NCBI GenBank assembly: GCA_002269645.1 | Contig: NIVC01002016.1 | Location: 66,729-130,728, forward strand | DNA: 64,000 nucleotides | Source: Macrostomum lignano | Lineage: Eukaryota | Direction: 5' to 3' | Shown here: in pieces, positions 1,257 to 53,654 of the stretch | Layout: each line of letters opens with the position of its first letter | Position numbering within the stretch: the first letter of the stretch is position 1 | The notes under the pieces: generated by a model | What the model was told of the DNA's origin: nothing | Databases searched by the model: none | What the model saw: the letters and a program-made list of their open reading frames with translations, nothing else | Made by a program: the position numbers and the translations under genes

Positions 1257-1995
1257 TGACTGACTGCGTGGCTGAACAGACTGTGTGAGTGAATGCCTCA
1301 CTAATAGAGCGAGAAAGCAAATTTAATCTGAAAATGTCAAGAAAGTATCAGATAAATTTGTAAAATTGCAGATGGTGAAGCAACGGCTCAGGACTGACTG
1401 GCTAAATGGGGCGTGGGCTCACAGTCAATTCGAACTTGAAAAGTGCAACAAAACTAGCTGGTTGTTAAGGAAGCAAGTGCTGATTTCAAAGAATACGAAC
1501 GAGTCTGCAGACTGGCAGTGCAGCTTCATTCATGCGAAAAAATGCTTTCTACGTAGCTAGGAATTCAGAATGTCATAAATCTGCCGGACACCTTTAAGCT
1601 TCACGAGCACGTAGGCGGAAACAGTGAGTTTAGTAGGTAGGCCTGAGAATAGCAGTCGCTGCAGTACGAGTTCCCGTAATGCTGACGTGAATTTCTGAGA
1701 ACATTAATGAGAAAATGAATGCTCAGTAAGAGTACAACGGTGTGCTAGTGAGCTGGATCCATATTACATTGATATTCGATTGAATGGGATAGGCGTAGCA
1801 GTGTTGGAATGGAAGCCGGCTCAGCTCATCATCATGATTCTCAATGACTTGTCCTCATTATTAGTTTCTGGGCAGGCCAATTTTCGATTGGGTCACGAGA
1901 AGCAGCATCGAGATGCCTACTCTGCCTGCTGGGCTTCTGGCCTGCGCTGAGAAGAGCTCCTCATATTTCTCCTCCTCCACGTGATGGGCTGAGTT

Positions 1996-2747
<752 letters not shown>

Positions 2748-2852
2748 CGAGCTGTTCCGCCCCCCCCCGGGCTGGTCTTTAGGCTTCTGCAATGTCACCA
2801 AGTCAAATCCAATTTCCCTTTCAGGCGGCAGCAGTCCAATAAACCAGTCGCA

Positions 2853-4150
2853 ATGTTGGGCAGCTGCAACAACAGCGCCATCAGCGCAATCAGCGCCCAG
2901 TACGATCGAGTGAGCACGCCGCTGCTGAGCGGCATCTCAGCCCTGTCTCTGCTGCTCAACGCCTGCAACATCGCCATATTCAGCAAGCGCAAAATGGTCT
3001 CGCCAACCAACTCAATTCTGCTGGCCATTGCCGTCAGCGATATCTGCAAAGTGTCCATGTTCCTGCTCATCACGGCGGCCCCTCCGCCCGTGACATCCTA
3101 CGGCAGGCAGGTGATCTACCTGTTCTGCAACGTGGCCATGTTCCTCATGCACGCCTTCGCCCTGTGGTGCGGCGTCCTGCTGGCTCTGTTCCGCTTCTTC
3201 TACCTGCGCTACTACGCCTCGCCAGCACCAAGGTGTGGTTCAGCCTGGCCCGCGCCCGCCTGGCCGTCTGCCTGGCCTTCCTGGCCAACATCGGCGCCGT
3301 GGCGCCCTACGCCAGCGTCCTGCGCGTCATCGAGCGCCGGACAGCCGACGCACAATTTTTGGCGGCAGGTGGCAGCGGCAACGCCACGCAGCAGCAGCAG
3401 CCGGTAACGGCGGCGGAGGCGGCTGCTCCGATAGCGGCGGCAGTTCACTACGAACCGGCCATGCTGGATGAGTACGAGTTCAAGGTGCGAATGTTCAGCA
3501 GCATAGCACAGAAGCTGGTGCCTTGCCTCATCATGACGGCCTTCTGCCTGTGCATCATTCGCAGCCTGCGCCAGACGGAGAAACGACGCGAGTCCCTAGC
3601 GAATCCGAATCGAAACAGCGGCCAGAAATCGGCGAGCGGGAGCTGCGGCGGCGGCGGCGGCGGCGGCGGCGACAGCGGCAGTCGCAGGAAGGAGCGACGC
3701 TCGCGCGATCACCACCGAACAACCAGCTTCCTGTTGATCATCATGCTGCTGTACAGCCTCTACGAGATCCCCATGGGCCTGCTGCTGATCCTGTCTGACC
3801 CGGCTCTGGAGCTCAGCGCCGTGATCTGCTTCTACAAAGCCTTTCACGGCATCCTCAACACGCTTGGCCTGGTGAATAACACGGTCAACTTTGTCCTCTA
3901 CTGCTTCATGAGCAAGCAGTTCAGGGACACCTTCAAGGAGGTATTCGGCCTCGACAAGCTGGCTGAGAAAGTGAGACAGGCAACCACCCGACGGCCGGAT
4001 GCGGCTCTGGTGGCAACTGGAGAGGCAGCTCGAGGCGACGCGGCGCCGGCTGCGGCGGCTGTTGCAGAGACCCACGAAGCGATGAGTTTGTACAGCTGCG
4101 GAGATTGCGGTCACAACGACATCCATGACGAAATTGAAGATGACGCTTGA
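2853..4150 (+). CDS. Rhodopsin-class GPCR, Srw/FMRFamide-myosuppressin-receptor-like, single coding exon, 1-nt frameshift near 3216
   Basis: TM1-3 in ORF 2853 ([34 protein letters not shown]) continue in the 3164 frame ([52 protein letters not shown]). Acceptor-like TTCCCTTTCAG ends at 2824, upstream of the ATG. Confidence 0.85.
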
Positions 4151-5885: not shown

Positions 5886-6275
5886 AAGGTTGGTCTGTGA
5901 ATTGACTTGGAAAGTGCCATAACAGAGAGCGGCAACATTCAAAATACATTTGTATTTTCTCACAAGATTTCACGAATATTTGAATTTTTCTCACCAGAAT
6001 CAAACAGATTCGATGCAAGCAGTGGCGCAGTAGAGTCGGTTGCGCCAACTGAAATTCGATTGGCTTCACAAAATTCCACGCTTAAGTAAACATTTTCATA
6101 TTTGGATTCGATCTAAAGTGGGTGCTGTTCTATTTTACTTCGTTTGGGGCAGAAATCTGAAAAAGAAGACTGCAGCTGCACTGAAAAAGCACCAGCCACC
6201 TCTTAGACTCCTGGGGTACTTTAAGCTTGTATGGTTTCCTGACTTAAGGACGTGCTCTCAGTAAGAATTTAGCTT

Positions 6276-7266
<991 letters not shown>

Positions 7267-7835
7267 TTCCAATTCCAATTCCAATTAGCTATTCCATAGC
7301 TACACAGATTATCAAAGCCTGAGATTGCAGGCCGCAGGTTGAAGCCGTTAATTGCCCTCCTACGCACCGGGTATTCCGTGTTCATTAGTGTTCTTAAAGC
7401 AGAAATATTCACAAATATAGGCAGGTACAGAGGACAAAATGCAACAGGTTAGGGGAGATGAGGCATGAGCGCACAGAAAGAGAATGTCGTTTTGTTTGTG
7501 CGCTTTGAGGACTTTGGCGGGGTTGCTCAGCCAAGCGGCGCCAAGCGGCGGAGTAGATGAAGAACACACAAGAAGCGGAGGAAGCCCCAGGTTAAAATCC
7601 CACCAAGCCGGTAGGGAAGAAAGCACCTTAGCAGCCCTGCAGCAACAGACTCCACATAGGGAACATGCTATCATCCCGGATGGAGACACAATAAAACAGC
7701 ACTTTGTCCGTTGCCTTTGAGCCGAGTTTTTGCTGCCAAGGTAATGGGAAGTTTCTTTCCAATTGGATCTTGCTTCTTAACGCTTTGAATTAGGATTTTG
7801 TTTAGAAATATTACACTGCAGGGGCTTCGGTGGGA

Positions 7836-8586
7836 GGAGGGAAGGAAGGAAGGAAGGAAGGAAGGAAGGAAGGAAGGAAGGAAGGAAGGAAAGAAGGAAG
7901 GAAGGAAGGAAGGGAGGAAGGAAGGAAGGAAGGAAGGAAGGAAGGAAGGAAGGGAGGAAGGAAGGAAGGAAGGAAGGAAGGAAGAAGGAAGAAGGAAGGA
8001 AGGAAGGAAGGAAGGAAGGAAGGATGAAGGAAGGAAGGAAGGAAGGAAGGAAGGAAGGAAGGAAGGAAGGAAGGAAGGAAGGAAGGAAGGAAGGGAGGAA
8101 GGAAGGAAGGAAGAAAGGAAGGAAGAGGGAATGAGGGAGGAAGGAAGGAAGGAAGGAAGGAAGGAAGGAAGGAAGGAAGGAAGGAAGGAAGGAAGGAAGG
8201 AAGGAAGGAAGGAAGGATGAAGGAAGGAAGGAAGGAAGGAAGGAAGGAAGGAAGGAAGGAAGGAAGGAAGGAAGGAAGGAAGGAAGGAAGGAAGGAAGGA
8301 AGGAAGGAAGGAAGGAAGGAAGGAAGGAAGGAAGGAAGGAAGGATGAAGGAAGGAAGGAAGGAAGGAAGGAAGGAAGGAAGGAAGGAAGGAAGGAAGGAA
8401 GGAAGGAAGGATGAAGGAAGGAAGGAAGGAAGGAAGGAAGGAAGGAAGGAAGGAAGGAAGGAAGGAAGGAAGGAAGGAAGGAAGGATGAAGGAAGGAAGG
8501 AAGGAAGGAAGGAAGGAAGGAAGGAAGGAAGGAAGGAAGGAAGGAAGGAAGGAAGGAAGGAAGGAAGGAAGGAAGGAAGGAAGGAA
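7836..8586. repeat. (GGAA)n microsatellite, about 750 bp
   Basis: Direct; source of the EGRK/PSFL ORFs. Confidence 0.98.
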
Positions 8587-8889
8587 TCAGGCACGCAGCT
8601 AAAGTTGGGTCCCTGAGACAATCCTGAGGCAAGAAGACGTGCTACTGAAGTATCAACGCAGATTGTAAGAGAGCCTGCATCCATTATCAGAAACGAAAAT
8701 GTCACTAGCAAGGCCTCCAAAGGTCAAATGGAATATCCAATACCTCTTAGCTTCTTTGGAAAAAAAATTGTCTTTGCATCCCGTCGCGTCACGTGCTGAA
8801 ACGAAGTTTGCTTGCATAGAGAAGTGTTTTTATACTCATTAGCATTGCTAGTTAAGATTTTACAATTAAATTATCTAAATTTACATTTG

Positions 8890-14478: not shown

Positions 14479-15531
14479 AAAAGTCACATGGTGCCAGGTC
14501 TGGACTGTGAGCAGGGTGAGCCATCAGCTGGACCCCACAGTCAGCCAGAAACTTGAGAGTTTGAGCCGCCATGTGCACACTGGCGTTGTCGTGGTGCAGA
14601 AGCACCCTGCGCATTTCGCACCTTGGGCACCTCTGGCTCACAGCAGAAAAGACTTTGGGTAGGCAAACTGTTGTGTACCAGTCGGCGGTGACTGGCGATC
14701 TTCAAGTGAAACGGAAGCCACATGCCCAGTGCGCATGAAGAAACAGCCCACCATCTGCTTGCCGACACTTCGGCTGCGTTGAAACTTGGTGGGGCTGTCC
14801 TCGTCTCCAAAGGTCCACATGGCTGACTGGCGCTTGCTTTCGGGGTCGTATTGATAAATCCAGGTCTCATCGCCCGTGAGGATGTCCCAGATATGCTGGC
14901 TGGTCCCAGATTCGAATTTCTGCAGCATGAATCGGCACCAAGCCACCCTGGTGTCCTTCTGCATGTCAGACAGCTGATGGGGGATCCACCGGGAAGCCAG
15001 CTTCCGCACTCCAAGGTGTTCGTGCAGAATGGCGTGCACACTCTCCGATCCAATACCGATCTCCTGCTGGATCTGCTGGTAGGTTACTCGCCGGTCAGCG
15101 GCAATCATGCTGGACACAGCGCAGATATTTTCTGGAGTCACTGCGTCACAGGGTCTCCCGGATCGATGTTCATCTTCGAGGCTTTCTCAACCTCAGCGAA
15201 ACTCAGCAAACCAGTTTTTGAAGGTTGCGTATGAAGGACACAGATGGGTGAAACGTTCTGTAAAGTTTGATATGAATCGGCCGGCGACTTGCCTTGCTTG
15301 AAGTACAAGTACATCATTGCTCTGAAGTCGCGATTTTCCAGCTTCATTGTTGAATTGAAGAACTCAGGAAGTGAACTGACTTTAACTCGCTGCAGTGGAC
15401 TCAAAAGTGGCTGCTTCTGTTTGAAAATTTTGCTGCGATACTTTTAAAAACTAGTCTTTACCATAGACAAATTTCATGCTTCTACGTCTCGTGGATCCTA
15501 CTCAGGCTAAAGACTTTCTGAGTGACCCTCG
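14479..15531 (-). mobile_element. Mariner (Tc1/mariner) transposon, frameshifted and 3'-truncated
   Basis: HTH N-terminus (RAMMYLYFKQGKS), RWIPHQL, TGDETW, HHDNAS and HSPDLAPCDFF motifs over several frames; one TIR CGAGGGTCACTCAGAAAGTCTTT ending at 15531 with TA at 15532-15533; the other end is missing. Confidence 0.93.
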
Positions 15532-16057
15532 TACTGGCCCACACACATACATGCACTGCACGCAGTACACAGTCATCAACAAGAAAAGGAAAACTACATT
15601 ATTAAAGTTGCTCACAGCATATTTAAAGAACATATAAATATGAATTTCGTCTGTACACGCCCAAACTGACATGTTTATTGATTTAATCAATTAATAGAGC
15701 TAAGTATTATACGAAGAAACAAAGATTTAAACTCTGAATGAAAAATTATAATTACAAGAAATAATGGTTGCATCAACTTTTAACGACAAAACGCAAATAA
15801 GTATTCAAGCAAGTTAAAGCGACCACAAGCAACATAGCAATCATAACATGGGACTAATAATCTGTACAAAGTCAATACAAAAAACTGAAACAAAAAATTT
15901 GCTACTGTTACTGTACCTATTTATTATTGTGAAATTGATAATTAAAACTAAAATAGTTGAAAGACTTGGAGAGACAACAATTAACACCACACAAAATTGG
16001 TAATAATTTTAACTGGCATGGTAATGCATTATCTTGGACAAATAGCTGCTGAGTGAG

Positions 16058-16827
16058 TCACACTGGACACAAAGCTGTTTCCTACAAGTCACACTGGACA
16101 CAAAGGTGTCTCCTATAAGTCACCTCTCAGACACAAAGCTGTCTCCTACAAGTCACACTGGACACAAAGATGTCTCCTACAAGTCACCTCTCAGACACAA
16201 AACTGTCTCCTACAAGTCACACTGGACACAAAGCTGTCTCCTACAAGTCACAGTGGACACAAAGCTGTCTCCTGCAAGTCACACTGGACACAAAGCTGTC
16301 TCCTACAAGTCACCTCTCAGACACAAAGCTGTCTCCTACAAGTCACACTGGACACAAAGCTGTCTCCTACAAGTCACCTCTCAGACACAAAGCTGTCTCC
16401 TACAAGTCACACTGGACACAAAGCTGTCTCCTACAAGTCACAGTGGACACAAAGCTGTCTCCTACAAGTCACAGTGGACACAAAGCTGTCTCCTGCAAGT
16501 CACACTGGACACAAAGCTGTCTCCTACAAGTCACAGTGGACACAAAGCTGTCTCCTACAAGTCCCCTCTCAGACACAAAGCTGTCTCCTACAAGTCACAC
16601 TGGACACAAAGCTGTCTCCTACAAGTCACAGTGGACACAAAGCTGTCTCCTGCAAGTCACACTGGACACAAAGCTGTCTCCTACAAGTCACAGTGGACAC
16701 AAAGCTGTCTCCTACAAGTCCCCTCTCAGACACAAAGCTGTCTCCTACAAGTCACAGTGGACACAAAGCTGTCTCCTGCAAGTCACACTGGACACAAAGC
16801 TGTCTCCTACAAGTCACAGTGGACACA
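16058..16827. repeat. 31/33-bp minisatellite (GACACAAAGCTGTCTCCTACAAGTCACACTG)
   Basis: Direct; begins about 50 bp past the stop of the minus-strand ZF gene. Confidence 0.95.
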
Positions 16828-16876
16828 AAAAAAATGCATAGCCGGACACAACAGCTGCAGACAAAGCACAAACCAG

Positions 16877-17222
16877 TTAGCTAGAATGGCTAATCATGTG
16901 AAGGCTGAGGTCGTCAACATTATCATAAGCCATGGGGCAGATTGGACAGGGCAGCTTGTCGCCGGGGCCTCGAGCCCGTTTCAGCATCAAGTGAGTCCGA
17001 TAAGTGTGATTGTTCAACAGCAGCTGGCTGTCGAAATTCTTACAGCAGATTGGGCACCGAAGCTGCTTCGGGCGCTTGTCTACTACTGGCTGCTGCTGTT
17101 GCTGCACTGACTGCGGTTGGGCAGGCCCTTCTTGGCTGACCCCGGCATCGTCCGCGTGGGAGCTGCTGCCGCTGACGCTGCCGCGCAGCCACTACGGTCC
17201 ACTGGGCCTTTCTCTGCCACAC
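16877..17222 (-). CDS. C2H2 zinc-finger gene A, last exon (2 fingers); apparent 1-nt deletion near 17184
   Basis: CPICCKNFDSQLLLNNHTYRTH and CPICPMAYDNVDDLSLHMISH; acceptor CTGCAG at 17228-17223; exon is 1 nt short of keeping frame. Confidence 0.8.
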
Positions 17223-18347
17223 CTGCAGTTGTATGAGGATTTGGCATCGGGATAAATCAAATGCGATCCGGAGATGAGGATCGGGATCAATTCTGGGTAT
17301 AAAGATTAGGATTATAAAATCTGATCTTTAGATGAAGATTGGGATCATATTGTGGGATCTAGGGGGTGAGGATTGGGGTTATAATGTGAGATCTAGGGGA
17401 TGAGGATTGGGATCATATTGTGGGATCTAGGGGGTGAGGATTGGGATCATATTGTGGGATCTAGGGGGTGAGGATTGGGGTTATAATGTGAGATCTAGGG
17501 GTGATGATTGGGATCATATTGTGGGATATAGGGGGTGAGGATTGGGATCATATTGTGGGATCTAGGGGGTGAGGATTGGGGTTATAATGTGAGATCTAGG
17601 GGATGAGGATTGGGATCATATTGTGGGATCTAGGGGATGAGGATTGGGATCATATTGTGGGATCTAGGGGGTGAGGATTGGGATCATATTGTGGGATCTA
17701 GGGGATGAGGATTGGGGTTATAATGTGAGATCTAGGGGTGATGATTGGGATCATAAAGTGAGATCTAGGGGATGAGGGATTTGGACTAAAAAGTGGGATT
17801 TAGGGGATGAGGATTTGGATTTTAAAGTGGGATCTAGGGGATGAGGATTGGGATTAAAGTGGGATCTAGGGGGTGAGGATTGGGATCATATTGTGGGATC
17901 TAGGGGATGAGGATTGGGGTTATAATGTGAGATCTAGGGGTGATGATTGGGATCATAAAGTGAGATCTAGGGGATGAGGGATTTGGACTAAAAAGTGGGA
18001 TTTAGGGGATGAGGATTTGGATTTTAAAGTGGGATCTAGGGGATGAGGATTGGGATTAAAGTGGGATCTAGGGGATGAGGATTGGGATCATATTGTGGGA
18101 TCTAGGGATGAGGATTGGGGTTATAATGTGAGATCTAGGGGTGATGATTGGGATCATAAAGTGAGATCTAGGGGATGAGGATTGGGGTTATAATGTGAGA
18201 TCTAGGGGTGATGATTGGGATCATAAAGTGAGATCTAGGGGATGAGGATTGGGATTTTAAAGTGGGATCTAGGGGATGAGGATTGGGAGTATAAAGTGGG
18301 ATTTAGGAGATGACGATTAGGATTAAAAAGTGGGATCTAGGGGATGA

Positions 18348-18424
18348 GCTTGGCGATGGTTCCCAACCTCCACGATTGGTGCCAAGCGGGCAGACTGGCG
18401 TGCCAGTCTGGCAAATAAGGAACC
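18348..18424 (+). ncRNA. HDV-like self-cleaving ribozyme (candidate)
   Basis: P1 GCTTGGC/GCCAAGC (7 bp); P3 ACC/GGT; L3 TCCACGATT; P1.1 CC/GG; P4 CAGACTGGC-GT-GCCAGTCTG; J4/2 GCAAA with catalytic C equivalent at 18412; P2 GGTTCC/GGAACC. Folded by eye against the HDV genomic ribozyme. Confidence 0.8.
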
Positions 18425-18662
18425 GGGGGGCGGTGAGGCCCGCGGCCGTGATTTGAAAACCACGTCCCGCGGGCAAAACCGCACCCGGCAGAGTGACCAC
18501 GGCATAACGAACCGTGGGACCTCTTTAAACGAAACCATCGTGAATCACCGGAGAGAGCAGGCGAGAGAGACAAGATCGGCAATGCGAAGCGTAAGAGCTG
18601 GAGTAAGGGACTCCCGGTGAGCTATGCCGAAAGGCGACAAAAAGCGAGAAGAAGAAGAAGAA
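18348..18662 (+). mobile_element. Short non-autonomous non-LTR retroelement (SINE/SIDE-like, probably RTE-derived) with a 5' ribozyme and (GAA)n tail
   Basis: Unique 315-bp insert in the minisatellite, flanked by GATCTAGGGGATGA(G) on both sides (18334-18348 and 18663-18677), 3' tail GAAGAAGAAGAAGAA, 5' end at ribozyme G1. Confidence 0.75.
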
Positions 18663-18818
18663 GATCTAGGGGATGAGGATTGGGATTATAAAGTGAGATC
18701 TAGGGGATGAGGACTGGGATCATTAAGTGGGATTTAGGGGATGAGGATTGGGATCATAATATAGAATTTAAGGATGAGGATTGGGATTTCTCTATCGAGG
18801 ACTGAGGCTAACACTCGC

Positions 18819-19280
18819 CAGTAGCAAAGCAGCCCTCCCTCCGCCCACCATCGCTGCTGACTCCACTGTCTCCGCCGCTGTCCTGTTCCGTCGCATTTGT
18901 CAACCTCCGCTTCAACGGTGGTGCAGCAGAGGCGTTCGATATTTCAGCAGCCGCTGTCGCCGCCGCCGCCGCTTCGCTGTTGAAATCTTCGTCGGCAACG
19001 GCGTGTCGCTCGAGCAGATGTTGGTCAAGCTGATCGGCGCTAGTGAACCTGGTGTTGGCGCACAGGAAGCAGGAGTACTTTGCTATGCAGGAGACGGCTT
19101 CGACAATAATCACTTTGGATTGCTGCTTCCGGGTGCAGCTTAGCTCGTGCCGAGCCTCCTGATTGGCGCCAGTTTGAGCAGCCGCTGGAGTCAAACCGGA
19201 AGGAGGGTTGCCTGAACAGTCAGCTGGTTTGCAGCTTAGCTCGTGCCGAGCCTCCTGATTGGCGCCAGTTTGAGCAGCTG
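18819..19280 (-). CDS. C2H2 zinc-finger gene A, exon 3 (1 finger)
   Basis: YSCFLCANTRFTSADQLDQHLLERH; acceptor TTTGACTCCAG ends at 19281, phase matches the upstream exon; donor is either GC-type at 18818 or GTTAGC about 6 nt further, both phase 1. Confidence 0.75.
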
Positions 19281-19424
19281 CTGGAGTCAAACCGGAAGGA
19301 GGCATCAGTAAAAAAGGTCCAAAAATAAATAAAATACCAAAATAAAATGACCCTGGAGTCTACAGACTCAGTGTTAACAGATTACTCGCGTAGATTCTGA
19401 CTTGGTTATAAACCAAATGGAAAT

Positions 19425-19822
19425 CTAGGGAATTACAGACCGATGACCAGCCGAAAATATTGGGAATTAGGGGCCGATGACCAGCCGAAAATATGGGGAA
19501 TTAGGGGCCGATGACCAGCCGAAAATATGGGGAATTAGGGGCCGATGACCAGCCGAAAATATGGGGAATTAGGGGCTGATGACCAGCCGAAAATATGGGA
19601 AATTAGGGGCCGATGACCAGCCGTAAATATGGGGAATTAGGGGCCGATGACCAGCCGAAAATATGGGGAATTAGGGGCCGATGACCAGCCGTAAATATGG
19701 GGAATTAGGGGCCGATGACCAGCCGTAAATATGGGGAATTAGGGGCCGATGACCAAATGCAAATATAGGGAATTAGGGGCCGATGACCAGCCGTAAATAT
19801 AGGAATTAGGGGCCGATGACCA
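19425..19822. repeat. 34-bp intronic minisatellite (GCCGATGACCAGCCGAAAATATGGGGAATTAGGG)
   Basis: Direct, about 11 units. Confidence 0.93.
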
Positions 19823-19865
19823 ATGTAAATTCTGCAAACAGCAAACACCCTAAATCTGTACTAAC

Positions 19866-20256
19866 CAACTCTGCACTCCTGCCCGCTGTCCTCTTCTAGT
19901 TCGCTATCATTTCTGTTAGTTGAGGCGAACGATTCGGAGTTCGAACCCGCGTGCTGCCTCAACAGATGCCGGTCAAGACAATCGGCCGTAGGCAGCTCAC
20001 GATCGCATAGGAAGCACTTGTAGGGCTTGAGTTGATTAGGCTGAGGCGAATTACTTCCACTGCGATCAAACTGTTGCTGCTGCTGCTGCCGCTGTCGAAG
20101 TTCAGATTCGGCGATGTTGCGACGACGCATTTTGAGAAAATTTTTCAGCACATTTGTCACCTTTCGGTCTTTGCTAATTGGGGCACTGAGATTAGGAGGC
20201 CGTCGTTGAGACTGCGGAGATTCTGACTGATTTGAGCATTGCTGTGGCCTGGAAGA
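19866..20256 (-). CDS. C2H2 zinc-finger gene A, exon 2 (1 finger)
   Basis: KPYKCFLCDRELPTADCLDRHLLRQH; acceptor poly-C..CTATCCAG, donor GTTAGT; 391 nt gives phase 0 to 1. Confidence 0.8.
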
Positions 20257-20397
20257 CTGGATAGATAGGAGGGGGGGGGGGAAGGCGTTTTAGTAAAATG
20301 TGTTTTAGCTACTTGAAATAGAGCTGTACTGATATTTTAATTGCAGTTGATAAAATTATCAAGGCTTGGATGCAACATTCTTGAATAGCGGGGACTT

Positions 20398-21075
20398 AGA
20401 ATTCGAGGGATTTCAATTCCAGGAAATCGAAATTATGAAGATTTGAATTCCAGGAAATACCAAAACTCTGCGGATTTAAATTTCAAGAAACCGAGATTCT
20501 GAGGATTAGAATTCCAGGAAACCGAAATTCTGAGGATTTGAATTCCAGGAAACCGAAATTCTGAAGATTTGAATTCCAGGAAATCGAATATCTAAGGATT
20601 AGAATTACAGGAAACCGAAATTCTGAAGATTAGAATTCCAGGAAACCGAAATTCTGAAGATTAGAATTTCAAGAAACGAAAATTCTGAAGATTAGAATTC
20701 CAAGAAACCGAAATTCTGAGGATTAGAATTCCAGGAAACCGAAATTCTGAGGATTAGAATTCCAGGAAACCGAAATTCTGAGGATTTGAATTCCAGGAAA
20801 TCTAATATCTAAGGATTAGAATTCCAGGAAACCGAAATTCTGAAGATTAGAATTCCATGAAATCGAATATCTAAGGATTAGAATTCCAGGAAACCGAAAT
20901 TCTAAGGATTAGAATTCCAGGAAACCGAAATTCTGAAGATTAGAATTCCAGGAAACCGAAATTCTGAAGATTAGAATTCCAAGAAACGAAAATTCTGAAG
21001 ATTAGAATTCCAAGAAACGAAAATTCTGAAGATTAGAATTCCAGGAAATCGAATATCTAAGGATTTGAATTCCAA
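20398..21075. repeat. 31-bp intronic minisatellite (GAATTCCAGGAAACCGAAATTCTGAGGATTA)
   Basis: Direct. Confidence 0.93.
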
Positions 21076-21110
21076 GACACCTACAGAAAAGCAAATGCAG
21101 ATCGAACTAC

Positions 21111-21458
21111 CTGAACAGCGGCTCCACTTTCCAAACTAAACGAAAGATCCTCTCTGAGTTGTCCACGGGTAACATCTGGGCAATCTGAATGGCAGACAAC
21201 TAGATGCTCCATCAATTCCCAATCAGTTGGGCAAGTCTCACTACAAAGCTCGCATTGCCAATTTGCACTGGCAGAATTTGGCGTTGGCGGCACATGCAGC
21301 TGCAGTGACACAGCTGGGTTGGGCTGCATCAGCATTAGCTGACGGTGTTCAGCCAGATGACTGGCAAGCTCCTGCTGGCTGGACTGTGGCAGCCAGCATA
21401 GTGGACAGGCCAGTGTGGCCTGCAGCTGCCTGTTGCAATCTGGCTGGGCTTCTTGCAT
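21111..21458 (-). CDS. C2H2 zinc-finger gene A, first identifiable coding exon (2 fingers)
   Basis: CPLCWLPQSSQQELASHLAEH and CELCSETCPTDWELMEHLVVCH; donor CAG|GTAGTT at 21110; ATG at 21458 may or may not be the true start. Confidence 0.75.
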
Positions 21459-24400
21459 GCAAGGGAATGCGATTTAATATTTAACTTAACATTAAATACC
21501 AGTATAGCTATAGGATTAGGATTCTATAGCAACTATGATAAAATTGGTAGGCCTACCTATTACCTAATAGTAATTAGACCTAGCTATTTCCTTTTCTATA
21601 TAGCTACTACAAGTACTAAAGAAATATAATTGTTAGATGTTTTTTTATTTATATAGTGCTATGCCTTTTGTGACTTTTTTATCATTAGTAACTATAATAT
21701 AATAATATGAAACTAATCACTTAGTTGTACAAAGAAAGGCTACATCATATATACCAAGTGTACATTGTTTAATGTTGGCCATTAAGTTACACTCAGAGTC
21801 ATTGTTGATATCAGTTGACTTGCCAATAGCATAGTCAAGATCAGTATTGGTATAGAAGAATGTTATAATAGCCTGTGACAGCTTGGTTAGCAAGGGTAAG
21901 CTGTTTTACTAATAATGTCCTTTTGCACTATAGCTTATTATTGACTATTAGATATTCTAGATATTCTATTCTATCTAGCTAAAAGGACTTGGAGATATAG
22001 CTACTGTATTTCTTAGCAAAGATAGTCAAAAAGAATATCAAAAACAAACACAAAAAGTGGGCGATATAAGAAAATAAAAATACAAAATGCAATACAAAGA
22101 CCAACATAACTAAATTAAAAATGCAATTAGGTCTAGTGGTAGCATTGGTTTAGGCCTAGCCCAAACTAAAAATCATGCATAATGGGCCTATAGGGTATAC
22201 TAAACATTTTTATGCCTACTCCATAGTCTGGATCATGCTAGGTACATGCCTGAACAAAAATCAAATAATAACAAATACATGCTAAAAAATTAAGTTCACG
22301 TCCATTCTTAAAACTATGCAGGTATTACGACAATGAATGACCTTTTTATATTATGAAAATAAATGACCCTTTTTTAAATTGCACAATGGACCCTTTTTGG
22401 CAAATAATTTGGTTTTTGCTTTTTGGCAATATTATTTACTACTATTACTAAAAATTGATACATACATAGATTTGTTAAAATGATTTATTATGAGCTTAAA
22501 AACCTGAAAAGCTTAAAATTTAGACTTAAAATGAACTTTTTTATATTTTTTTCTATTGCACTGTAACTTTTCTTTGTGATTATATAAAGTGCATGCCAGG
22601 TGTTTTTTATTAGAGACAGGGGGGTTGTGTGTACCTTGGCACACTTTAAGTGACATAGGTACAAAACCAGCAAAAGGCATTACTGCCCATTCTGCCAACT
22701 CTCCTGAGTAGGCATACAAGCACGCGGATATGTATGTAGGCACACACTTACATAGGAGTGTACAGCAGCTCTAACTTTATTTATTGTTAAGCATATATAT
22801 ACTTCATTGCGCCTTAGGGGATGGGCTCTCAAGGCTGTTAATTGCATAAGCAGAGCCAAGCCAAGATTTTAATTCAGCCCCATATTAATGTGACTGCACT
22901 TGGAATCAAGCCTGGGTTGTTGGCACACCAGAGCCTGTGCTAGACTGCTGGGCTACGGCCTTCTGCATGCCAAGTGTGCATATAAAGGCCTATACTATTT
23001 TCTTAGAAGTGATGGATGCCAATTGTGCATGCCTGTTTTTGGCATGCAAGGCCAATGCATGCCTGAATTTTCTGGCATAGGCCTATACTATATGATCTGG
23101 AGTGTGGTGCATACTATAGCCTAAGCCTAGGCTATTAAATGCATTTGGTATGATATTATTATTGTTATATTTATGTAATATTTAAACATAATAAAATAGC
23201 TTCAATTTAACCCAATATAATTTGACATAATTTTATATAAAAGCACATTATTATTAGCATATTATTTTATAGGCCTATTTAGGAATATTAGGCCTGTCAT
23301 GCCTATGATCTTACTATAGATAGATAGATGAGCCTAAGGCGGCAAGGCCTAGGATATATCTATATCTTTGGCTTAAGGCTTAAAAACATTAAGAACTAAT
23401 TAATAAAGGCTTCATTGTAGGGCCTACCTATCTATTAAGCTAATAAACTTCAAAATATGCCTAGTAGGCCTACAGACTAGAGACCAATACAAGTCTGCCA
23501 TTTGTAGACTAGCTGGCTGCCTCATCCCATGGGCCATGGGATACCCCAGCTCGAGCTCTAAGGCCCATGAGAGTTAGCTGTAGCATGCTAGGCCTAGTGG
23601 CAAGACCAATATAATTTGGCAATTGGCATAATTAACTCACACAATTTTTTCTGCATTGAAGATTCAAGAATGAAGAAGACGAGACAAAGGCAAGATTATT
23701 TTCATAAAAATGTAGGCCTACCATACACCTAATAAAGCATTTCGATATGATAGACTATTGATATATGCCCTACCCATCTGACATCAATGTTAGACTGAAC
23801 CAAACCTTAGATTACCGATCATACCTAATGAACATTTCGCTTACATTGATTTCAATCGATTACACCATGCACGTACTTGTAATTAACCAGCAGTTTTGCG
23901 AGTTTAAACATTAAGAATATCTATTTCTCCGAAAATGCATGTTTAAGCAAACCTGACAAAAAATAATGTGCTCTATTCAGTGTAACACACACACACTAAT
24001 AAATGTAGAATTCGGTTTTTCAAATAAAAATAATTTTCTGTAAAAAACGGAAATTGTTTAAGATCTCGGTTAAATTCAGAACTGATTTTCCGATATTATC
24101 GAGAATTCTAGAGTCCACTATACTCTACAGTACACGTCCCAATCCCAAAGCTTAATTAATCATTCGTATAACTAGCTATACTTATCTTGCGTTAGTTCGG
24201 TAGCATCAAGGAATACTGAAATTATATGTATACTAACTAAGGTCTATACTAGTTTACGGATTACTCAAGAATAAAAGCTAGCCATGCCATCACATCTACT
24301 ACAAGTGGTCCTTGAGTAATCCGTGCATGCGTGCAGTGCATGGCTTGTAAGGGCCGTTGTTGTCCTTTGGGGTAGCATCAGCAGCAAGCTAAATGTAGAG

Positions 24401-29388: not shown

Positions 29389-30624
29389 ATGCTGGAGTCC
29401 CAGGCCGACCACGAGAACCACATCAACAATCGGACGAGCGCGGTGGATGAACCGCCTGAGCGGGTGCTGGCCTTCATCTCCGGGATTGCCATCCTGCTCT
29501 GCCTGGTGCTGGGCGCCCTCGGTAACCTATGGATTATGATTGTGGTGCTGGTCCGCCGCGAGATGCGGAGCAACCTAATTAACCTGTTCATTGCCAGTCT
29601 ATGCCTGAACGACTTGTTGAACTTGCTGCTAAACCAGAGCATGGTGGCGGTTTCCTATTTAGCCGGAAGCTGGAAGCTGGGTCCTCTGCTCTGCGAGCTC
29701 ATGCCAGAGCTCAACATGTTGCTGGTGTGCGTCTCCCTCTGGCACCACGCCTTAATTAGCCTGCACCGCTACATTGTGGTGGTGCACAACAGCACCTACG
29801 TACAGCTGCACAAGGGTCTGTACGCTGGCATCATCCTGGCCGGTACTCGAGTGTTTGGCGCCCTGCTCAGCCTCTCCTTGCCGCTCTTCAACTCGGGCAG
29901 TTGGCGCGGCAGCACTGTCTATCAGGCCAAGATGCTGCGCTGCATCTACGAGAGAACCCAGCGGTTCCGCATACTGGGGGTCGTGATCATCTCCCAGCTG
30001 ATTCCTTGCGCGATCGTCATCGTCTGCTTCGCCCTGATCTTCGTGTTTGTCCGCCGGGCCAACACCGGCTCTCTGGTCAGCGATCAGCTGCTGATGCGAC
30101 GCGAGCTGCGCATCACTAAGATGTTCGGCGTCGTGTTTCTCATGTTCCTGGTGGGGTTCCTGCCCTACGGCTGTCTGAGAATGATAGACTCTGGCAACAC
30201 ACTCGGGCCGCAGGCGTACGTGCTCGTCACGCTGCTATACGCTGCTGCGTCCAGCGTCAACCCGCTGATCTTCGGCGCCATGAACAGAGAAATCCGGCTG
30301 GCCTGCCTGCGGCTGATCTCGCGGAGGAGCTCCCGGGCTTCCGCCGCCGCTGCCGCTGGCGCCTCCACAGCCGCCCGCACTGCCTCTGCAACCGCAGCCA
30401 CCGGGAATAAGGTCCAACAGAAGCGACAAAAAAAGAAGCCAGTCGCCGCCGCCGCCTCGGTGGTTGAGGTCGGCGCCAGCAAGAATCGCTGCCGGCCGTC
30501 TACGGAGCTTTCGTCTTCGCTGGGCAGCGGCGCCACTGCCGGGCCGGAGAGCCGCCAGCTGCTGTCCGTCAGCGACCCGGACCAGAGCTGCCAGCAGGAG
30601 AGCGACACCACACTGATGGATTGA
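29389..30624 (+). CDS. Rhodopsin-class GPCR, Tre1/Moody/GPR84/melatonin-receptor-like, single coding exon, 411 aa
   Basis: GN in TM1, NLFIASLCLND in TM2, WKLGPLLC, ISLHRYIVVVH, RRELRITKMF, FLPY, NPLIFGAMNREIR; N-terminal NRT glycosylation site. Confidence 0.92.
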   Translation: MLESQADHENHINNRTSAVDEPPERVLAFISGIAILLCLVLGALGNLWIMIVVLVRREMRSNLINLFIASLCLNDLLNLLLNQSMVAVSYLAGSWKLGPLLCELMPELNMLLVCVSLWHHALISLHRYIVVVHNSTYVQLHKGLYAGIILAGTRVFGALLSLSLPLFNSGSWRGSTVYQAKMLRCIYERTQRFRILGVVIISQLIPCAIVIVCFALIFVFVRRANTGSLVSDQLLMRRELRITKMFGVVFLMFLVGFLPYGCLRMIDSGNTLGPQAYVLVTLLYAAASSVNPLIFGAMNREIRLACLRLISRRSSRASAAAAAGASTAARTASATAATGNKVQQKRQKKKPVAAAASVVEVGASKNRCRPSTELSSSLGSGATAGPESRQLLSVSDPDQSCQQESDTTLMD

Positions 30625-38100: not shown

Positions 38101-38421
38101 TAGAGTACCTGTCACAGACCCTAGAGTACCTGTCACAGACCCTAGAGTACCTGTCACAGACCCTAGAGTACCTGTCACAGACCCTAGAGTACCTGTCACA
38201 GACCCTAGAGTACCTGTCACAGACCCTAGAGTACCTGTCACAGACCCTAGAGTACCTGTCACAGACCCTAGAGTACCTGTACAGACCCTAGAGTACCTAT
38301 ACAGACCCTAGAGTACCTGTCACAGACCCTAGAGTACCTGTACAGACCCTAGAGTACCTGTCACAGACCCTAGAGTACCTGTCACAGACCCTAGAGTACC
38401 TGTACTCTCGTACAGACCCTA
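35183..38421. repeat. 21-bp minisatellite (GTCACAGACCCTAGAGTACCT), about 3.2 kb
   Basis: Direct; degenerate left edge, homogeneous core; source of the VTGTLGS/SQTLEYL ORFs. Confidence 0.98.
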
Positions 38422-40115: not shown

Positions 40116-40696
40116 TTCTTGGCTGGCGTGAACTGGCTGTGTTATGTGACAGCCAACGGTGAGAGATGGAAGCTAAGAAAGGAGAAAAGTCCCTTTTATT
40201 GTGGTGTCGGGGCATAGCCGGTAGCCTCAGCCTATTCAGACTTTCACCTCCAGCCAAAAAACGGACTTCCTGTGCGTCAGTTGTCAAAGTTTAATCAAGC
40301 AGTTATGCTGTATGTTAGCATTCATTCAGATTTAGTAAATTATCTTTCACAAGAGACTTGGGTGCTCTTTGGAGAGAGGGAAAAAGGATAGAGTCATTGT
40401 GTCATTGCGTTATAAATAACGAAAAGGCTTTGGCCTCTGAAAAAGGCTTCATTAATCAACTCAGCACTTTTGAGTTTTTCAGCTTTAGGAGAGTAAATGG
40501 TATGTATATATTCATGTAGCTTTTAATAACAATAAAGCTGTAGCTGTTACTGAGAGGCATAATTAATCGTACATGTATGAAGGTTTAAGAGCATGCGAAA
40601 GTGATGATGCAATATATGATGTATGATATGATGTAATTGATGTAAGAGCATGCGAAAGTGATGATGTCGGCCAAAAATTGCAATTTTGCAAAAGAA

Positions 40697-41442
<746 letters not shown>

Positions 41443-47243: not shown

Positions 47244-47863
47244 TCAGCGACAGCCGCTCCCGTGTCCAATTCCACTGCCGCTGGATCCGCCAGGCGGCAG
47301 GCTGGACTCGTCCTGTATGCAGGACAGAATCTCGCCAGCAATACGCTGAGCAGCCTCTGTACCAATATTGAGATTGAGATCGTGCAGATCCAGCATAGAC
47401 TCGTCCAGGACTGGCGCGGCGGAGTGGGCCAACCGCAAGTGGCGGCTCAGGGTAGGCCGGTGCCGATATCGGCGACCGCACAGTCGGCAAGCATGTCTGG
47501 CATCCGTAGAATGAGTGTCCCGATGCTTCAGCAATCCGCACTGACTAGAAAATGCTTTGCCGCACTGCTGACAGGTGAATAATAATTGGCCACCGGAGTG
47601 GCGGCACAATTCGTGGGCACGCAGATTGCCCAGAGTGCTGGATTGGTAAGGGCAGTGCTGACAGGCGAATGGTCTGCTGCTGCCGACACTGGCGCTGACT
47701 GAGGCCGATACAGGGCGACCCTGTCTCAGGCTTAACAGCCGGCTGTGCTTTGCTAGCCTATGCTTAGCGAGATCTGAGCTGGTCAGGTAGCTTTTATTGC
47801 ACTTGTCGCAAGAGTAGTGACGAGCGCTGGCGTGACTGGGCAGGTGGCGGACAAAGGCCGAGT
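47244..47863 (-). CDS. C2H2 zinc-finger gene B, last exon
   Basis: End of finger 2 (SAFVRHLPSH) plus four fingers (CDKC, CQHC, CQQC, CRLC); acceptor CATTTCTAG at 47864. Confidence 0.88.
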
Positions 47864-48034
47864 CTAGAAATGAGATGTTAGAAAATGGGATTTGGGAGAT
47901 TAGGAGAGCCGCGACTGCTGCTAGCAGGGTCTGGTCTGTTCTAGGGGAAATTCTCCTCACGTAGCCTTAGTCAGAGGGGATATTCTCCTCACTTAGCCTT
48001 AGTCAGTCAGAGGGGATATTCTACTCATGTAGCC

Positions 48035-52584: not shown

Positions 52585-52619
52585 CTGGAGCAACGGGCAG
52601 CGGGTGATAAGAAACTTTA

Positions 52620-52790
52620 GGTCGGGATTTCAGACACTTCAGGGCGAGATTTCAGAGACACTTCAGGGCGGGATTTCAAAGACACTTCAGATCGGGATTT
52701 CAGAGACACTTCATGGCGGGATTTCAGAGACAATTCAGGGCGGGATTTCAGAGACAATTCAGGGCGGGATTTTAAAGACACTTCAGGTCA
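52620..52790. repeat. 24-bp intronic minisatellite (GGGATTTCAGAGACACTTCAGGGC)
   Basis: About 7 units inside the 52585-52898 intron. Confidence 0.88.
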
Positions 52791-52898
52791 TGCGGTTGTT
52801 GAAAGGCTTTCAAGACAATTTTTGGACGGACATTCAGTAGATATATCCATGGAGTCCAACAAGTTTACATAAAAGCTGAAGCCAGCCATAAACCTTAC

Positions 52899-53540: not shown

Positions 53541-53654
53541 GCTGCAGACTGAAGCTGAAGATTTTTATGCAGCTTGAATTAGCAAATATTGACTCCAAGT
53601 TAACTAGCACTTTCTGCTTCATTTTTGTGCCTTGGATCTAGGCGGTGGCGGCCC

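What the first reader, a model, noticed from the sequence alone, without database searches (positions are those of the whole stretch)
18348..18424. Near-canonical HDV-like self-cleaving ribozyme hidden in an intronic minisatellite
Seen: 77 nt aligning element by element with the HDV genomic ribozyme: 7-bp P1 from G18348, P3 ACC/GGT, L3 TCCACG.. keeping the U20/G25 spacing (T18369, G18374), CC/GG P1.1, GCA after it, a perfect 9-bp P4, and J4/2 GCAAAT versus HDV GCGAAU with C18412 at the C75 position; P2 GGTTCC/GGAACC. Deviations: a 9-nt L3 and a 1x2 internal loop at the top of P2. It lies antisense to the host ZF intron, so it would not cut that pre-mRNA.
Basis: partly seen in the sequence, partly recalled or inferred. 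Interest (0 to 1): 0.85.

Follow-up and report, generated by a model that had tools for sequence, protein, structure and literature searches.

The report
HDV-like ribozyme heading a short retroposon
The 77-nt motif has every sequence and pairing hallmark of an HDV-like self-cleaving ribozyme, but it is the first 77 nt of a 315-nt non-coding retroposon that jumped into the minisatellite, a known arrangement in which the ribozyme trims the element's RNA to its exact 5' end.

Summary
Window 18348-18424 (+) folds into the full HDV-like double pseudoknot: 26 Watson-Crick pairs in P1, P2, P3, P1.1 and P4, and every fixed nucleotide of the published family descriptor. The Rfam HDV model matches end to end at 34.4 bits, below its gathering score of 50. 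It is the best sub-threshold hit in the window. Descriptor scans hit only this site, against about 1 site per 1200-2000 simulated windows.

The ribozyme is the 5' head of a 315-nt GC-rich, structured, non-coding block (18348-18662). The block ends in (GAA)5 and is flanked by a perfect 15-bp target-site duplication. Excising it restores an exact 34-nt minisatellite unit. The predicted cleavage site lies within 1 nt of the insertion's 5' boundary.

Best reading: a non-autonomous non-LTR retroposon (SIDE/NARTc-like). Its ribozyme cuts it out of read-through transcripts, and a LINE partner reverse-transcribes it. The host is probably a monogenean-like flatworm.

Not shown: catalysis, other copies, covariation and the partner LINE. 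No accessible collection holds the host genome.

This is a new member of a known kind, of moderate interest.

The parts
17331..18348 (.). Host 34-bp minisatellite, upstream part (consensus GATGAGGATTGGGATCATAATGTGGGATCTAGGG)
   Evidence: Tandem Repeats Finder: period 34, 30.2 copies
18334..18348 (.). Left copy of the 15-bp target-site duplication GATCTAGGGGATGAG. Its last G may instead be the element's G1 (1-nt ambiguity).
   Evidence: Longest common flank match is 15/15. The bases just outside differ: G/A before, C/G after.
18348..18662 (+). The whole inserted element: 315 nt, GC 58%, non-coding, a non-autonomous non-LTR retroposon
   Evidence: Removing 18349-18677 restores an exact 34-nt repeat unit. 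GC and CpG differ from the flanks. No protein homologues or Pfam hits. No tRNA-like head.
18348..18424 (+). HDV-like ribozyme. Predicted cleavage is between A18347 and G18348.
   Evidence: RF00094 full-length match at 34.4 bits. Descriptor scans hit only here. All 26 pairs are Watson-Crick.
18348..18354 (+). P1 5' strand GCUUGGC. It pairs with 18381-18387 (GCCAAGC). G18348-C18387 is the cleavage-site pair.
18358..18363 (+). P2 5' strand GGUUCC. It pairs with 18419-18424 (GGAACC), closing the outer pseudoknot.
   Evidence: P2 is not scored by the Rfam model, so it is independent support.
18366..18380 (+). P3 (ACC with GGU) enclosing L3 UCCACGAUU. U18369 and G18374 are the reverse-wobble positions. 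C18370/C18371 pair with G18389/G18388 to form P1.1.
   Evidence: The fixed positions match the descriptor quoted in PMC6326823.
18391..18410 (+). P4 hairpin: 8 bp (CAGACUGG with CCAGUCUG) and loop CGUG
18411..18418 (+). J4/2 GCAAAUAA. C18412 is the presumed general-acid cytosine (the C75 equivalent) in the motif C-A-A-A. U18416 can pair with A18365.
   Evidence: Rfam alignment to the consensus GCuAAu. C-R-R-A rule.
18425..18647 (+). Structured GC-rich body and 3' region of the element. This is the presumed recognition region for the partner reverse transcriptase (inferred).
   Evidence: MFE -84.8 kcal/mol, z = -3.97, 0 of 200 shuffles fold as well
18648..18662 (+). (GAA)5 simple-repeat 3' tail. 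The next two bases (GA, 18663-64) could belong to either the tail or the target (microhomology).
   Evidence: RTE-type LINEs end in simple repeats, including (GAA)n (PMC2887409).
18663..18677 (.). Right copy of the 15-bp target-site duplication
18663..18787 (.). Host 34-bp minisatellite, downstream part

Best explanation
The 77 nt are an HDV-like self-cleaving ribozyme forming the 5' head of a 315-nt non-coding, non-autonomous non-LTR retroposon. The element consists of the ribozyme head, a structured body and a (GAA)n tail.

Proposed mechanism:
1. A master copy with no promoter of its own is transcribed as part of a longer host or read-through transcript.
2. The ribozyme folds and cuts 5' of its G1, releasing an RNA whose first base is G1.
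3. A partner LINE reverse transcriptase/endonuclease (probably of a clade with simple-repeat 3' ends, such as RTE-like) recognises the 3' region and (GAA)n tail.
4. That enzyme nicks a target and copies the RNA to its very end by target-primed reverse transcription.
5. The new copy therefore starts exactly at the ribozyme cleavage site and is flanked by a ~15-bp duplication.

This particular copy landed in a 34-bp minisatellite inside a probable intron of a minus-strand zinc-finger gene. It is in antisense orientation, so it is probably a silent passenger there.

Shown: the fold and all fixed nucleotides; the insertion, the duplication and the tail; the coincidence of the cleavage site with the 5' boundary.

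Inferred: catalysis, co-transcription, the partner LINE and target-primed reverse transcription.
For: Ribozyme:
- Full-length RF00094 match at 34.4 bits, the best sub-threshold hit in the window.
- P2 and P1.1, which the model does not score, are also perfect.
- All descriptor constants are met: G1-Y, U/C/G in L3, CC-GG in P1.1, C-R-R-A in J4/2.
- Descriptor scans find 1 real site against 1 in 2000 and 2 in 2429 simulated windows.
- Relative to the Rfam HDV consensus, three P1 pairs and one P3 pair differ on both sides yet stay paired, while L3, P1.1 and J4/2 keep the consensus bases.

Retroposon:
- The 15/15 duplication and its excision restore an exact 34-nt repeat unit.
- There is a (GAA)5 tail at the end opposite the ribozyme, on the same strand.
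- Composition is foreign: GC 58% against 45%, CpG observed/expected 1.07 against 0.59.
- The body is structured, z = -3.97.
- It has no coding capacity and no tRNA-like head.

Link between the two:
- The predicted cleavage site (5' of G18348) coincides within 1 nt with the independently defined 5' insertion boundary.

Precedents:
- Cleavage at the element's 5' end in R4, Dong, baggins and L1Tc (PMC3774820).
- Promoter-less baggins and RTE elements transcribed from introns (PMC6765202).
- R2 and R2/R1 SIDEs with a ribozyme head, a LINE 3' end and a 14-bp TSD (PMC3414825).
- NARTc and TbRIME.
- TSDs abutting the ribozyme cleavage site, used as a retrotransposition footprint in a flatworm LINE (PMC8501958).
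Against: - Only one copy is available. There is no second copy in the window and none in the viral, metagenome or prokaryote collections. Family status and covariation are therefore untested.
- No RT or endonuclease ORF in the window could be the partner.
- The Rfam score is below the gathering threshold (34.4 against 50).
- Three features might lower activity: L3 is 9 nt; the cleavage-site pair is G-C rather than the G.U wobble (changes at this pair reduce HDV activity; PMC1874588); and this copy has A at position -1, which is less favourable than U or C in HDV (abstract of PMC1874588).
- The insertion lies in a tandem repeat, where duplications can arise by other routes. However, the phase restoration argues for a true TSD.
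Confidence: 0.75

Rival explanations
1. Chance resemblance. The inserted block is some unrelated piece of DNA (retroposed or filler) whose first 77 nt merely look like an HDV-like ribozyme and never cleaved.
For: - The Rfam score is below gathering, and the whole-window E-value over all families is 0.33.
- Only a single copy is known, so there is no covariation.
- My descriptors were written after I had seen the sequence.
Against: - The descriptor frequency is about 5e-4 to 8e-4 per 64-kb window.
- The single-family E-value is about 8e-5.
- The motif start coincides within 1 nt with an independently defined insertion boundary and is on the strand set by the 3' tail. Under chance placement that is roughly another 1e-2 to 1e-5.
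- All 26 pairs are Watson-Crick and all fixed nucleotides are present.
Confidence: 0.05
2. A retroposed copy of a small HDV-ribozyme-bearing replicating or circular RNA (a delta-like or viroid-like agent, or a retrozyme-type circRNA) that a LINE captured once, rather than a dedicated LINE-dependent retroposon family.
For: - Small size (315 nt), high GC and a strong fold, z = -3.97, recall viroid-like RNAs.
- A monomer released by HDV-type cleavage would start at G1.
- Delta-like circRNAs and ribozyme-bearing circles occur in many animals (PMC7761336).
Against: - No second ribozyme was found on either strand.
- There is no tandem or dimeric arrangement.
- There is no delta-antigen-like or any other coding similarity.
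- A simple-repeat (GAA)n 3' end is typical of LINE 3' ends (PMC2887409).
- A linear ribozyme-headed unit with a LINE-type tail is exactly the SIDE/NARTc layout.
Confidence: 0.05
3. A host-functional intronic ribozyme in the manner of CPEB3, which cuts a host transcript to regulate the zinc-finger gene or an antisense RNA.
For: It lies between zinc-finger exon-like ORFs, probably in an intron. Intronic HDV-like ribozymes exist in mammals (PMC6765202).
Against: - It is on the strand opposite the ZF ORFs, so it is not in that pre-mRNA.
- It sits inside a young TSD-flanked insertion (perfect 15/15 duplication), which argues for a recent passenger rather than a conserved regulatory element.
- No orthologous locus is available to show conservation.
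Confidence: 0.03
4. The element family is (or was) ribozyme-processed as in the best explanation, but this particular copy is catalytically impaired or dead. It would be a fossil whose G-C cleavage-site pair, 9-nt L3 or A at -1 prevent efficient cleavage.
For: - Changes at the G1:U37 pair reduce HDV activity (PMC1874588).
- A at -1 is less active than U or C at -1 (abstract).
- L3 is one nucleotide longer than in the Rfam model.
- The antisense intronic location gives no obvious transcription.
Against: - G1-Y (C or U) is within the descriptor derived from natural HDV-like ribozymes (PMC6326823).
- All helices and core bases are intact.
- The perfect TSD and pure tail indicate a young copy that should still resemble its active master.
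Confidence: 0.12

Closest known systems
R2 SIDEs and R2/R1 hybrid SIDEs of Drosophila (short internally deleted elements; PMC3414825)
   Same: - Short and non-coding.
- An HDV-like ribozyme forms the 5' head.
- A LINE-type 3' end is used by a partner reverse transcriptase.
- The hybrid SIDEs have a 14-bp TSD, close to the 15 bp seen here.
- Both depend on co-transcription plus self-cleavage.
   Different: - SIDEs insert site-specifically in 28S rDNA and end in poly(A) or R1 3' UTRs. This element sits in a minisatellite in a gene intron and ends in (GAA)n.
- The R2 ribozymes have large J1/2 loops. This one is compact (J1/2 of 3 nt, with a P4).
- The parent LINE is unknown here.
L1Tc/NARTc/TbRIME Pr77 HDV-like ribozyme of trypanosomatids (PMC3185411, PMC3383444, PMC4035085)
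   Same: - A 77-nt HDV-like ribozyme occupies exactly the first nucleotides of both an autonomous LINE and its non-autonomous derivatives.
- It releases the element from longer co-transcripts.
- Insertions are dispersed and not site-specific.
   Different: - Pr77 is also an internal promoter, which is not testable here.
- The host kingdom and the tail type (poly(A)) differ.
- L1TcRz departs much more from the HDV core sequence than this one does.
HDV-like ribozymes of promoter-less RTE and baggins LINEs (the drz-Agam-2 family and others; Ruminski et al. 2011, as summarised in PMC6765202)
   Same: - The ribozyme sits at the 5' terminus.
- The elements lack promoters and are transcribed from introns or read-through.
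- RTE 3' ends carry simple repeats, including (GAA)n (PMC2887409).
- The P3/L3 core ACCUCCNCG..UGGU is nearly identical to that of the mosquito ribozyme drz-Agam-1, a separate Rfam family not stated here to be LINE-associated.
   Different: - Those are autonomous LINEs of several kb that encode APE and RT. This element is 315 nt and non-coding.
- The Rfam drz-agam-1 model matches only weakly (14.8 bits against a gathering score of 37).
Twister T-variant ribozymes at the 5' end of Perere-3 LINEs in the flatworm Schistosoma mansoni (PMC8501958)
   Same: - A flatworm host.
- A 5' ribozyme processes a non-LTR element.
- The TSD lies immediately next to the cleavage site as the footprint of retrotransposition.
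- Insertion is not site-specific.
   Different: - The ribozyme class differs (twister against HDV-like).
- Perere-3 is autonomous.
- In Perere-3 part of the ribozyme's P1 is rebuilt from the target. Here the ribozyme lies wholly inside the element.
HDV genomic ribozyme (Rfam RF00094) and the mammalian CPEB3 intronic ribozyme
   Same: - The same nested double-pseudoknot topology.
- The same core nucleotides: U and G in L3, the CC-GG P1.1, and the catalytic C followed by AA.
- An intronic location, as for CPEB3.
   Different: - It is not part of a circular replicon and not a conserved host intron element.
- G1 pairs with C instead of U.
- L3 is 9 nt.
- P4 is short.
- The score is below the RF00094 gathering threshold.

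Membership tests
HDV-like self-cleaving ribozymes | Nested double pseudoknot: P1 (7 bp) starting at the cleavage site, plus P2, P3 (3 bp), P1.1 (2 bp) and P4, in the canonical order | tested here: met
   26 of 26 Watson-Crick pairs at the expected positions. The covariance model aligns P1, P3 and P4 end to end.
HDV-like self-cleaving ribozymes | G at +1 paired to a pyrimidine (G1-Y) | tested here: met
   G18348-C18387. The descriptor allows Y (PMC6326823). It is C here, not the U of HDV, which may reduce the rate (PMC1874588).
HDV-like self-cleaving ribozymes | L3 with conserved U, C and G (the U/G reverse-wobble positions) and two Cs that pair with GG after P1 to form P1.1 | tested here: met
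   L3 is UCCACGAUU, with U18369, C18373 and G18374. C18370/71 pair with G18389/88. L3 is one nucleotide longer than in the Rfam model.
HDV-like self-cleaving ribozymes | Catalytic cytosine in J4/2 within C-R-R-A, directly before the P2 3' strand | tested here: met
   C18412-A-A-A, followed by U18416 (which pairs with A18365) and GGAACC
HDV-like self-cleaving ribozymes | Score at or above the Rfam gathering threshold for an HDV-type family (RF00094, drz-agam-1 and others) | tested here: not met
   RF00094 scores 34.4 bits against 50, and drz-agam-1 scores 14.8 against 37. These models are built from narrow sequence families and do not score the pseudoknot helices, so failing them does not exclude the fold class (my own knowledge).
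HDV-like self-cleaving ribozymes | Site-specific, divalent-ion-dependent self-cleavage that is abolished by mutating the catalytic C | not testable with these tools
   This needs an in vitro transcription and cleavage assay.
HDV-like self-cleaving ribozymes | Compensatory base changes in the helices among related copies | tested here: inconclusive
   No other copy was found. Only the comparison with the Rfam HDV consensus is possible. There, 3 P1 pairs and 1 P3 pair are changed on both sides and still pair.
Non-LTR (TPRT) retroposon, non-autonomous (SIDE/NARTc-like) | Insertion flanked by a target-site duplication | tested here: met
   The 15/15 duplication GATCTAGGGGATGAG; excision restores an exact 34-nt repeat unit.
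Non-LTR (TPRT) retroposon, non-autonomous (SIDE/NARTc-like) | 3' end with a poly(A) or simple-repeat tail on the sense strand | tested here: met
   (GAA)5 at 18648-18662, on the same strand as the ribozyme
Non-LTR (TPRT) retroposon, non-autonomous (SIDE/NARTc-like) | No coding capacity of its own | tested here: met
   No homologues for the sense frame in 1.84 billion representative proteins or for the antisense ORF. No Pfam hit. The open frame is not significant.
Non-LTR (TPRT) retroposon, non-autonomous (SIDE/NARTc-like) | Multiple dispersed copies with different flanks | tested here: inconclusive
   The window holds one copy. The host genome is absent from the searchable collections.
Non-LTR (TPRT) retroposon, non-autonomous (SIDE/NARTc-like) | An autonomous LINE in the same genome sharing the 3' end (and possibly the ribozyme) | not testable with these tools
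   There is no RT or endonuclease ORF in the window, and the host genome is not available.
Canonical SINE (pol III head) | A tRNA-, 7SL- or 5S-derived head with an internal pol III promoter | tested here: not met
   ARAGORN finds nothing. No tRNA, 7SL or 5S Rfam match even at E <= 10.
Delta-like agents (Kolmioviridae) or endogenous copies of them | A delta-antigen ORF and a ribozyme in each polarity | tested here: not met
   No protein similarity. There is a single ribozyme, on one strand only.
Retrozymes (circRNA-forming ribozyme retroelements) | Two ribozyme copies (in LTRs or tandem units) bracketing the unit, so that a monomer can be excised and circularised | tested here: not met
   There is one ribozyme and no tandem or repeated copy of the unit.

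The most novel reading that the evidence does not exclude
This is the first glimpse of an undescribed, recently active family of promoter-less, ribozyme-headed SINE-like retroposons in monogenean-type flatworms. It would also be the first HDV-like ribozyme in Platyhelminthes outside R2. Flatworm non-LTR elements would then use at least three interchangeable ribozyme classes as 5'-end-defining modules: hammerhead, twister and HDV-like. A compact, near-consensus HDV core would be maintained on a 315-nt non-coding element.
Probability: 0.5. Interest if true: 0.45.

Novelty: new member of a known kind. Interest (0 to 1): 0.35.

Why it matters
- The case shows how to read such a motif. The ribozyme is best understood through the mobile element it heads, not through the repeat or intron it sits in.
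- If the family is confirmed in the host genome, it extends HDV-like 5'-processing ribozymes to short non-coding retroposons of a parasitic flatworm lineage. There, only hammerhead (Sm-alpha) and twister (Perere-3) ribozymes are documented in schistosome non-LTR elements and SINEs, and an HDV-like ribozyme in planarian R2.
- It would give a compact natural HDV-like variant (G1-C pair, 9-nt L3, 8-bp P4) for biochemical comparison.
- It would supply a clean marker for annotating full-length copies: an exact 5' end at G1.
- It does not open a new mechanism.

Tried and rejected
1. Sibling copies through spurious gene calls. The antisense 81-aa ORF had no homologues. The sense 90-codon frame had 0 hits among 1.84 billion representatives.
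2. Sibling copies through DNA patterns. There were 0 hits in viral contigs and 0 hits in two metagenome scans, one of the core 20-mer and one of a 3'-region 21-mer.
3. Prokaryote assemblies. Two hits (L001, L002) proved to be bare 20-mer coincidences with no flanking similarity and no HDV signal. About one such hit is expected by chance in that much sequence.
4. A second copy, or a partner LINE, in the window. There is none.
5. Coding remnant. The open frame from nucleotide 1 has no ATG, no Pfam hit and no homologue, and shuffles give p = 0.035 for that frame and 0.11 for any sense frame. I rejected it as evidence of coding.
6. Pol III SINE head. None found.
7. Exact look-up of the window's GPCR to name the host. 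It is not on record. The homology search gives only monogenean relatives at 40-50% identity, and the best relative comes from an unnamed ENA assembly.
8. Ruminski et al. 2011 (PMC3308841) is not held. I used the review summary instead.
9. My first descriptor script timed out and I rewrote it.

Full report
**Observation**

Window 18348-18424 (+) reads GCUUGGC GAU GGUUCC CA ACC UCCACGAUU GGU GCCAAGC GG G CAGACUGG CGUG CCAGUCUG GCAAA U AA GGAACC.

| Helix | Pairing |
|---|---|
| P1 | 18348-54 with 18381-87, 7 bp |
| P2 | 18358-63 with 18419-24, 6 bp; A18365-U18416 possible above a 1x2 loop |
| P3 | 18366-68 with 18378-80, 3 bp |
| P1.1 | C18370/71 with G18389/88 |
| P4 | 18391-98 with 18403-10 |

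- The "perfect 9-bp P4" would leave a 2-nt loop. It is really 8 bp plus a CGUG tetraloop.
- The cleavage-site pair is G18348-C18387, not the G.U wobble of HDV.

**Is it more than chance?**

- No Rfam family reaches its gathering score anywhere in the window.
- With permissive settings, the HDV_ribozyme model (RF00094) aligns over its whole length (positions 1-89 of 89) to 18346-18424 at 34.4 bits.
- That gives E = 0.0026 for the 501-nt region and E = 0.33 for the full 64 kb over 4227 families. It is the best sub-threshold hit in the window, and about 8e-5 if only this family is counted.
- The model places the scissile bond 5' of G18348.
- The covariance model cannot score the pseudoknot helices P2 and P1.1, so their perfect pairing is additional evidence.
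- I wrote two descriptors that include them. A relaxed one hit only 18348 in the real window and 1 site in 2000 second-order-Markov simulated windows.
- The second follows the published family descriptor: G1-Y, L3 of UCCNCG, GG for P1.1, and C-R-R-A before the P2 3' strand (PMC6326823). It hit only 18348, against 2 sites in 2429 simulations.
- Both descriptors were written after I had seen the sequence. The numbers are indicative rather than exact.

**Match to the family**

The descriptor quoted in PMC6326823 fixes four things:
- G1 paired to a pyrimidine;
- U19, C23 and G24 in L3;
- C20-G37 and C21-G36 in P1.1;
- C-R-R-A in J4/2.

The candidate has G18348-C18387; U18369, C18373 and G18374; C18370-G18389 and C18371-G18388; and C18412-A-A-A. 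All are met.

Relative to the Rfam HDV consensus, three P1 pairs and one P3 pair differ on both strands yet still pair, while L3, P1.1 and J4/2 keep the consensus bases.

Deviations that might lower the rate:
- L3 is 9 nt, one more than in the Rfam model.
- The cleavage-site pair is G-C. Changes at G1:U37 reduce HDV activity (PMC1874588).
- This copy has A at position -1. In HDV the order of activity is U > C > A > G (abstract of PMC1874588).

**What it really is**

The 34-bp minisatellite (17331-18348 and 18662-18787) is in fact interrupted by a foreign block.

- The block starts at the ribozyme and ends in (GAA)5 at 18648-18662.
- It is bracketed by a perfect 15-bp direct duplication, GATCTAGGGGATGAG, at 18334-48 and 18663-77. 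The bases just outside the two copies differ.
- Duplications in a tandem array can be trivial, so I checked phase. Deleting 18349-18677 joins GATGAG to GATTGGGATTATAAAGTGAGATCTAGGG and recreates an exact 34-nt unit. This is a real insertion with a target-site duplication.
- The block is 58% GC against 45% in the flanks. Its CpG observed/expected ratio is 1.07 against 0.59 for the window.
- Its body folds far better than shuffles (z = -3.97; 0 of 200 shuffles).
- It has no tRNA-like head and no Rfam tRNA, 7SL or 5S match.
- It has no coding signal. The antisense 81-aa ORF has no homologues. The sense frame, open for 90 codons from nucleotide 1 with no ATG, has no Pfam hit and no hit among 1.84 billion representative proteins. 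Its openness is not significant (p = 0.035).

The key point is position. The ribozyme's predicted cleavage site lies within 1 nt of the 5' boundary of the insertion, which was defined independently. G18348 can be read either as the last base of the duplication or as G1 of the element. The ribozyme is also on the strand whose 3' end carries the simple-repeat tail.

**Mechanism**

*Shown:*
- the fold and its core bases;
- the insertion, the duplication and the tail;
- the coincidence of the cleavage site with the 5' end.

*Inferred, from established knowledge of ribozyme-bearing non-LTR elements:*
1. A master copy without a promoter is transcribed within a longer RNA.
2. The ribozyme cleaves 5' of G1.
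3. A partner LINE enzyme recognises the structured 3' region and the (GAA)n tail, nicks a target, and copies the RNA to its processed 5' end.
4. The new copy therefore begins at G1 and has a ~15-bp duplication.

The GA shared by the tail and the target at 18663-64 fits priming by microhomology. That point is also inference.

*Precedents:*
- Cleavage at the element's 5' end in R4, Dong, baggins and L1Tc (PMC3774820).
- Promoter-less baggins and RTE elements transcribed from introns, and SINE-type elements using ribozymes (PMC6765202).
- RTE 3' ends carrying simple repeats, including (GAA)n (PMC2887409).
- R2 and R2/R1 SIDEs, with a ribozyme head, a LINE 3' end and a 14-bp TSD (PMC3414825).
- NARTc and TbRIME sharing the L1Tc ribozyme.
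- In the flatworm S. mansoni, TSDs directly abutting a twister cleavage site, taken as the footprint of retrotransposition (PMC8501958).

**Host and local context**

The window is eukaryotic and packed with minisatellites. An intronless rhodopsin-type GPCR ORF (29389-30624) has its best named relatives in the monogenean flatworms Cichlidogyrus and Protopolystoma, at only 40-50% identity. The exact protein is not on record. The host is therefore probably a neodermatan, monogenean-like flatworm that is absent from the searchable collections.

C2H2 zinc-finger exon-like ORFs lie on the minus strand at 21473-21084, 20289-19864, 19359-18811 and 17191-16880. The element, on the plus strand, lies between the last two. 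In that orientation this copy would not be part of the host pre-mRNA and is probably silent.

The perfect duplication, pure tail, intact helices and undecayed CpG suggest a young insertion.

**Rivals**

- *Chance resemblance (0.05).* The combined motif statistics and the boundary coincidence argue against it.
- *Retro-copy of a delta-like, viroid-like or retrozyme-type circular RNA (0.05).* There is no second ribozyme, no tandem unit and no delta-antigen similarity, and the tail is LINE-type.
- *Host-functional intronic ribozyme like CPEB3 (0.03).* It is on the wrong strand and inside a young mobile insertion.
- *Correct family, but this copy is catalytically weak or dead (0.12).* This cannot be excluded without an assay.

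**Limits**

- Only one copy is available.
- Nothing turned up in the window, viral contigs or metagenomes.
- The two prokaryote hits are bare 20-mer coincidences.
- Family status, covariation, the partner LINE and catalysis all remain untested.

**Verdict**

The biologically meaningful unit is a 315-nt ribozyme-headed, TSD-flanked non-LTR retroposon. That is a known kind of system (SIDE, NARTc and RTE-type 5' processing). This would be a new member, from a flatworm lineage where HDV-like ribozymes are so far documented only in planarian R2. Interest is moderate (0.35).

Noticed in passing
window 18348-18617 (+): Frame 0 is open for 90 codons from the element's very first base, across the ribozyme, with no ATG. 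This recalls R2-type ORFs that run up to the ribozyme. However, it has no homologues or Pfam hits, and shuffles reach it 3.5% of the time (11% for any sense frame).
   Followed up: yes
window 16880-21473 (-): Four exon-like ORFs carry C2H2 zinc-finger motifs (21473-21084, 20289-19864, 19359-18811, 17191-16880). They are separated by four different minisatellite arrays: 31 bp at 16056-16829, 34 bp at 17331-18787, 34 bp at 19421-19822 and 31 bp at 20400-21081. The introns of this gene seem to consist largely of minisatellites. A further ZF ORF lies at 47247-47966 (-).
   Followed up: partly
window 29389-30624 (+) and 2843-4147 (+): Two apparently intronless rhodopsin-family GPCR ORFs (Pfam 7tm_1 and Srw-like). 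The nearest named relatives of the first are monogenean flatworm proteins at 40-50% identity, and the exact protein is absent from the collection.
   Followed up: partly
window 14641-15443 (-): A decayed mariner/Mos1-type DNA transposase remnant. HTH_48 and HTH_Tnp_Tc3_2 motifs lie in two adjacent frames.
   Followed up: no
window 58006-58472 (+): A frameshifted fragment of an IS1595/ISXO2-like DDE transposase (PF12762, E = 1.7e-5), probably a dead DNA transposon. Whether it is Merlin-type is my guess from memory and was not tested.
   Followed up: no
window 55593-55907 (-): An exon-like ORF encoding a Pcc1/LAGE3-type KEOPS subunit (PF09341, E = 5.8e-22).
   Followed up: no
window 51313-52629 (-) and 52791-53564 (-): Two long non-repetitive ORFs (439 and 258 codons) in a 52-56% GC stretch, with no Pfam match. 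They could be a lineage-specific gene or part of an unrecognised mobile element.
   Followed up: no
window 1994-2782, 6244-8720, 35323-38291, 40563-41114, 59221-63419: Very long micro- and minisatellite arrays with strong strand composition skew (GC skew down to -0.68 at 62-64 kb). They give hundreds of codons of spurious repetitive ORFs and sub-threshold MIR1883/CsrB Rfam noise.
   Followed up: no
L001 6690-6709 and L002 1072-1091: The 20-mer CCTCCACGATTGGTGCCAAG occurs once in an actinomycete MAG and once in Pelagibacterium xiamenense. Neither has flanking similarity or a ribozyme-like fold, so they are chance matches at about the expected rate.
   Followed up: yes
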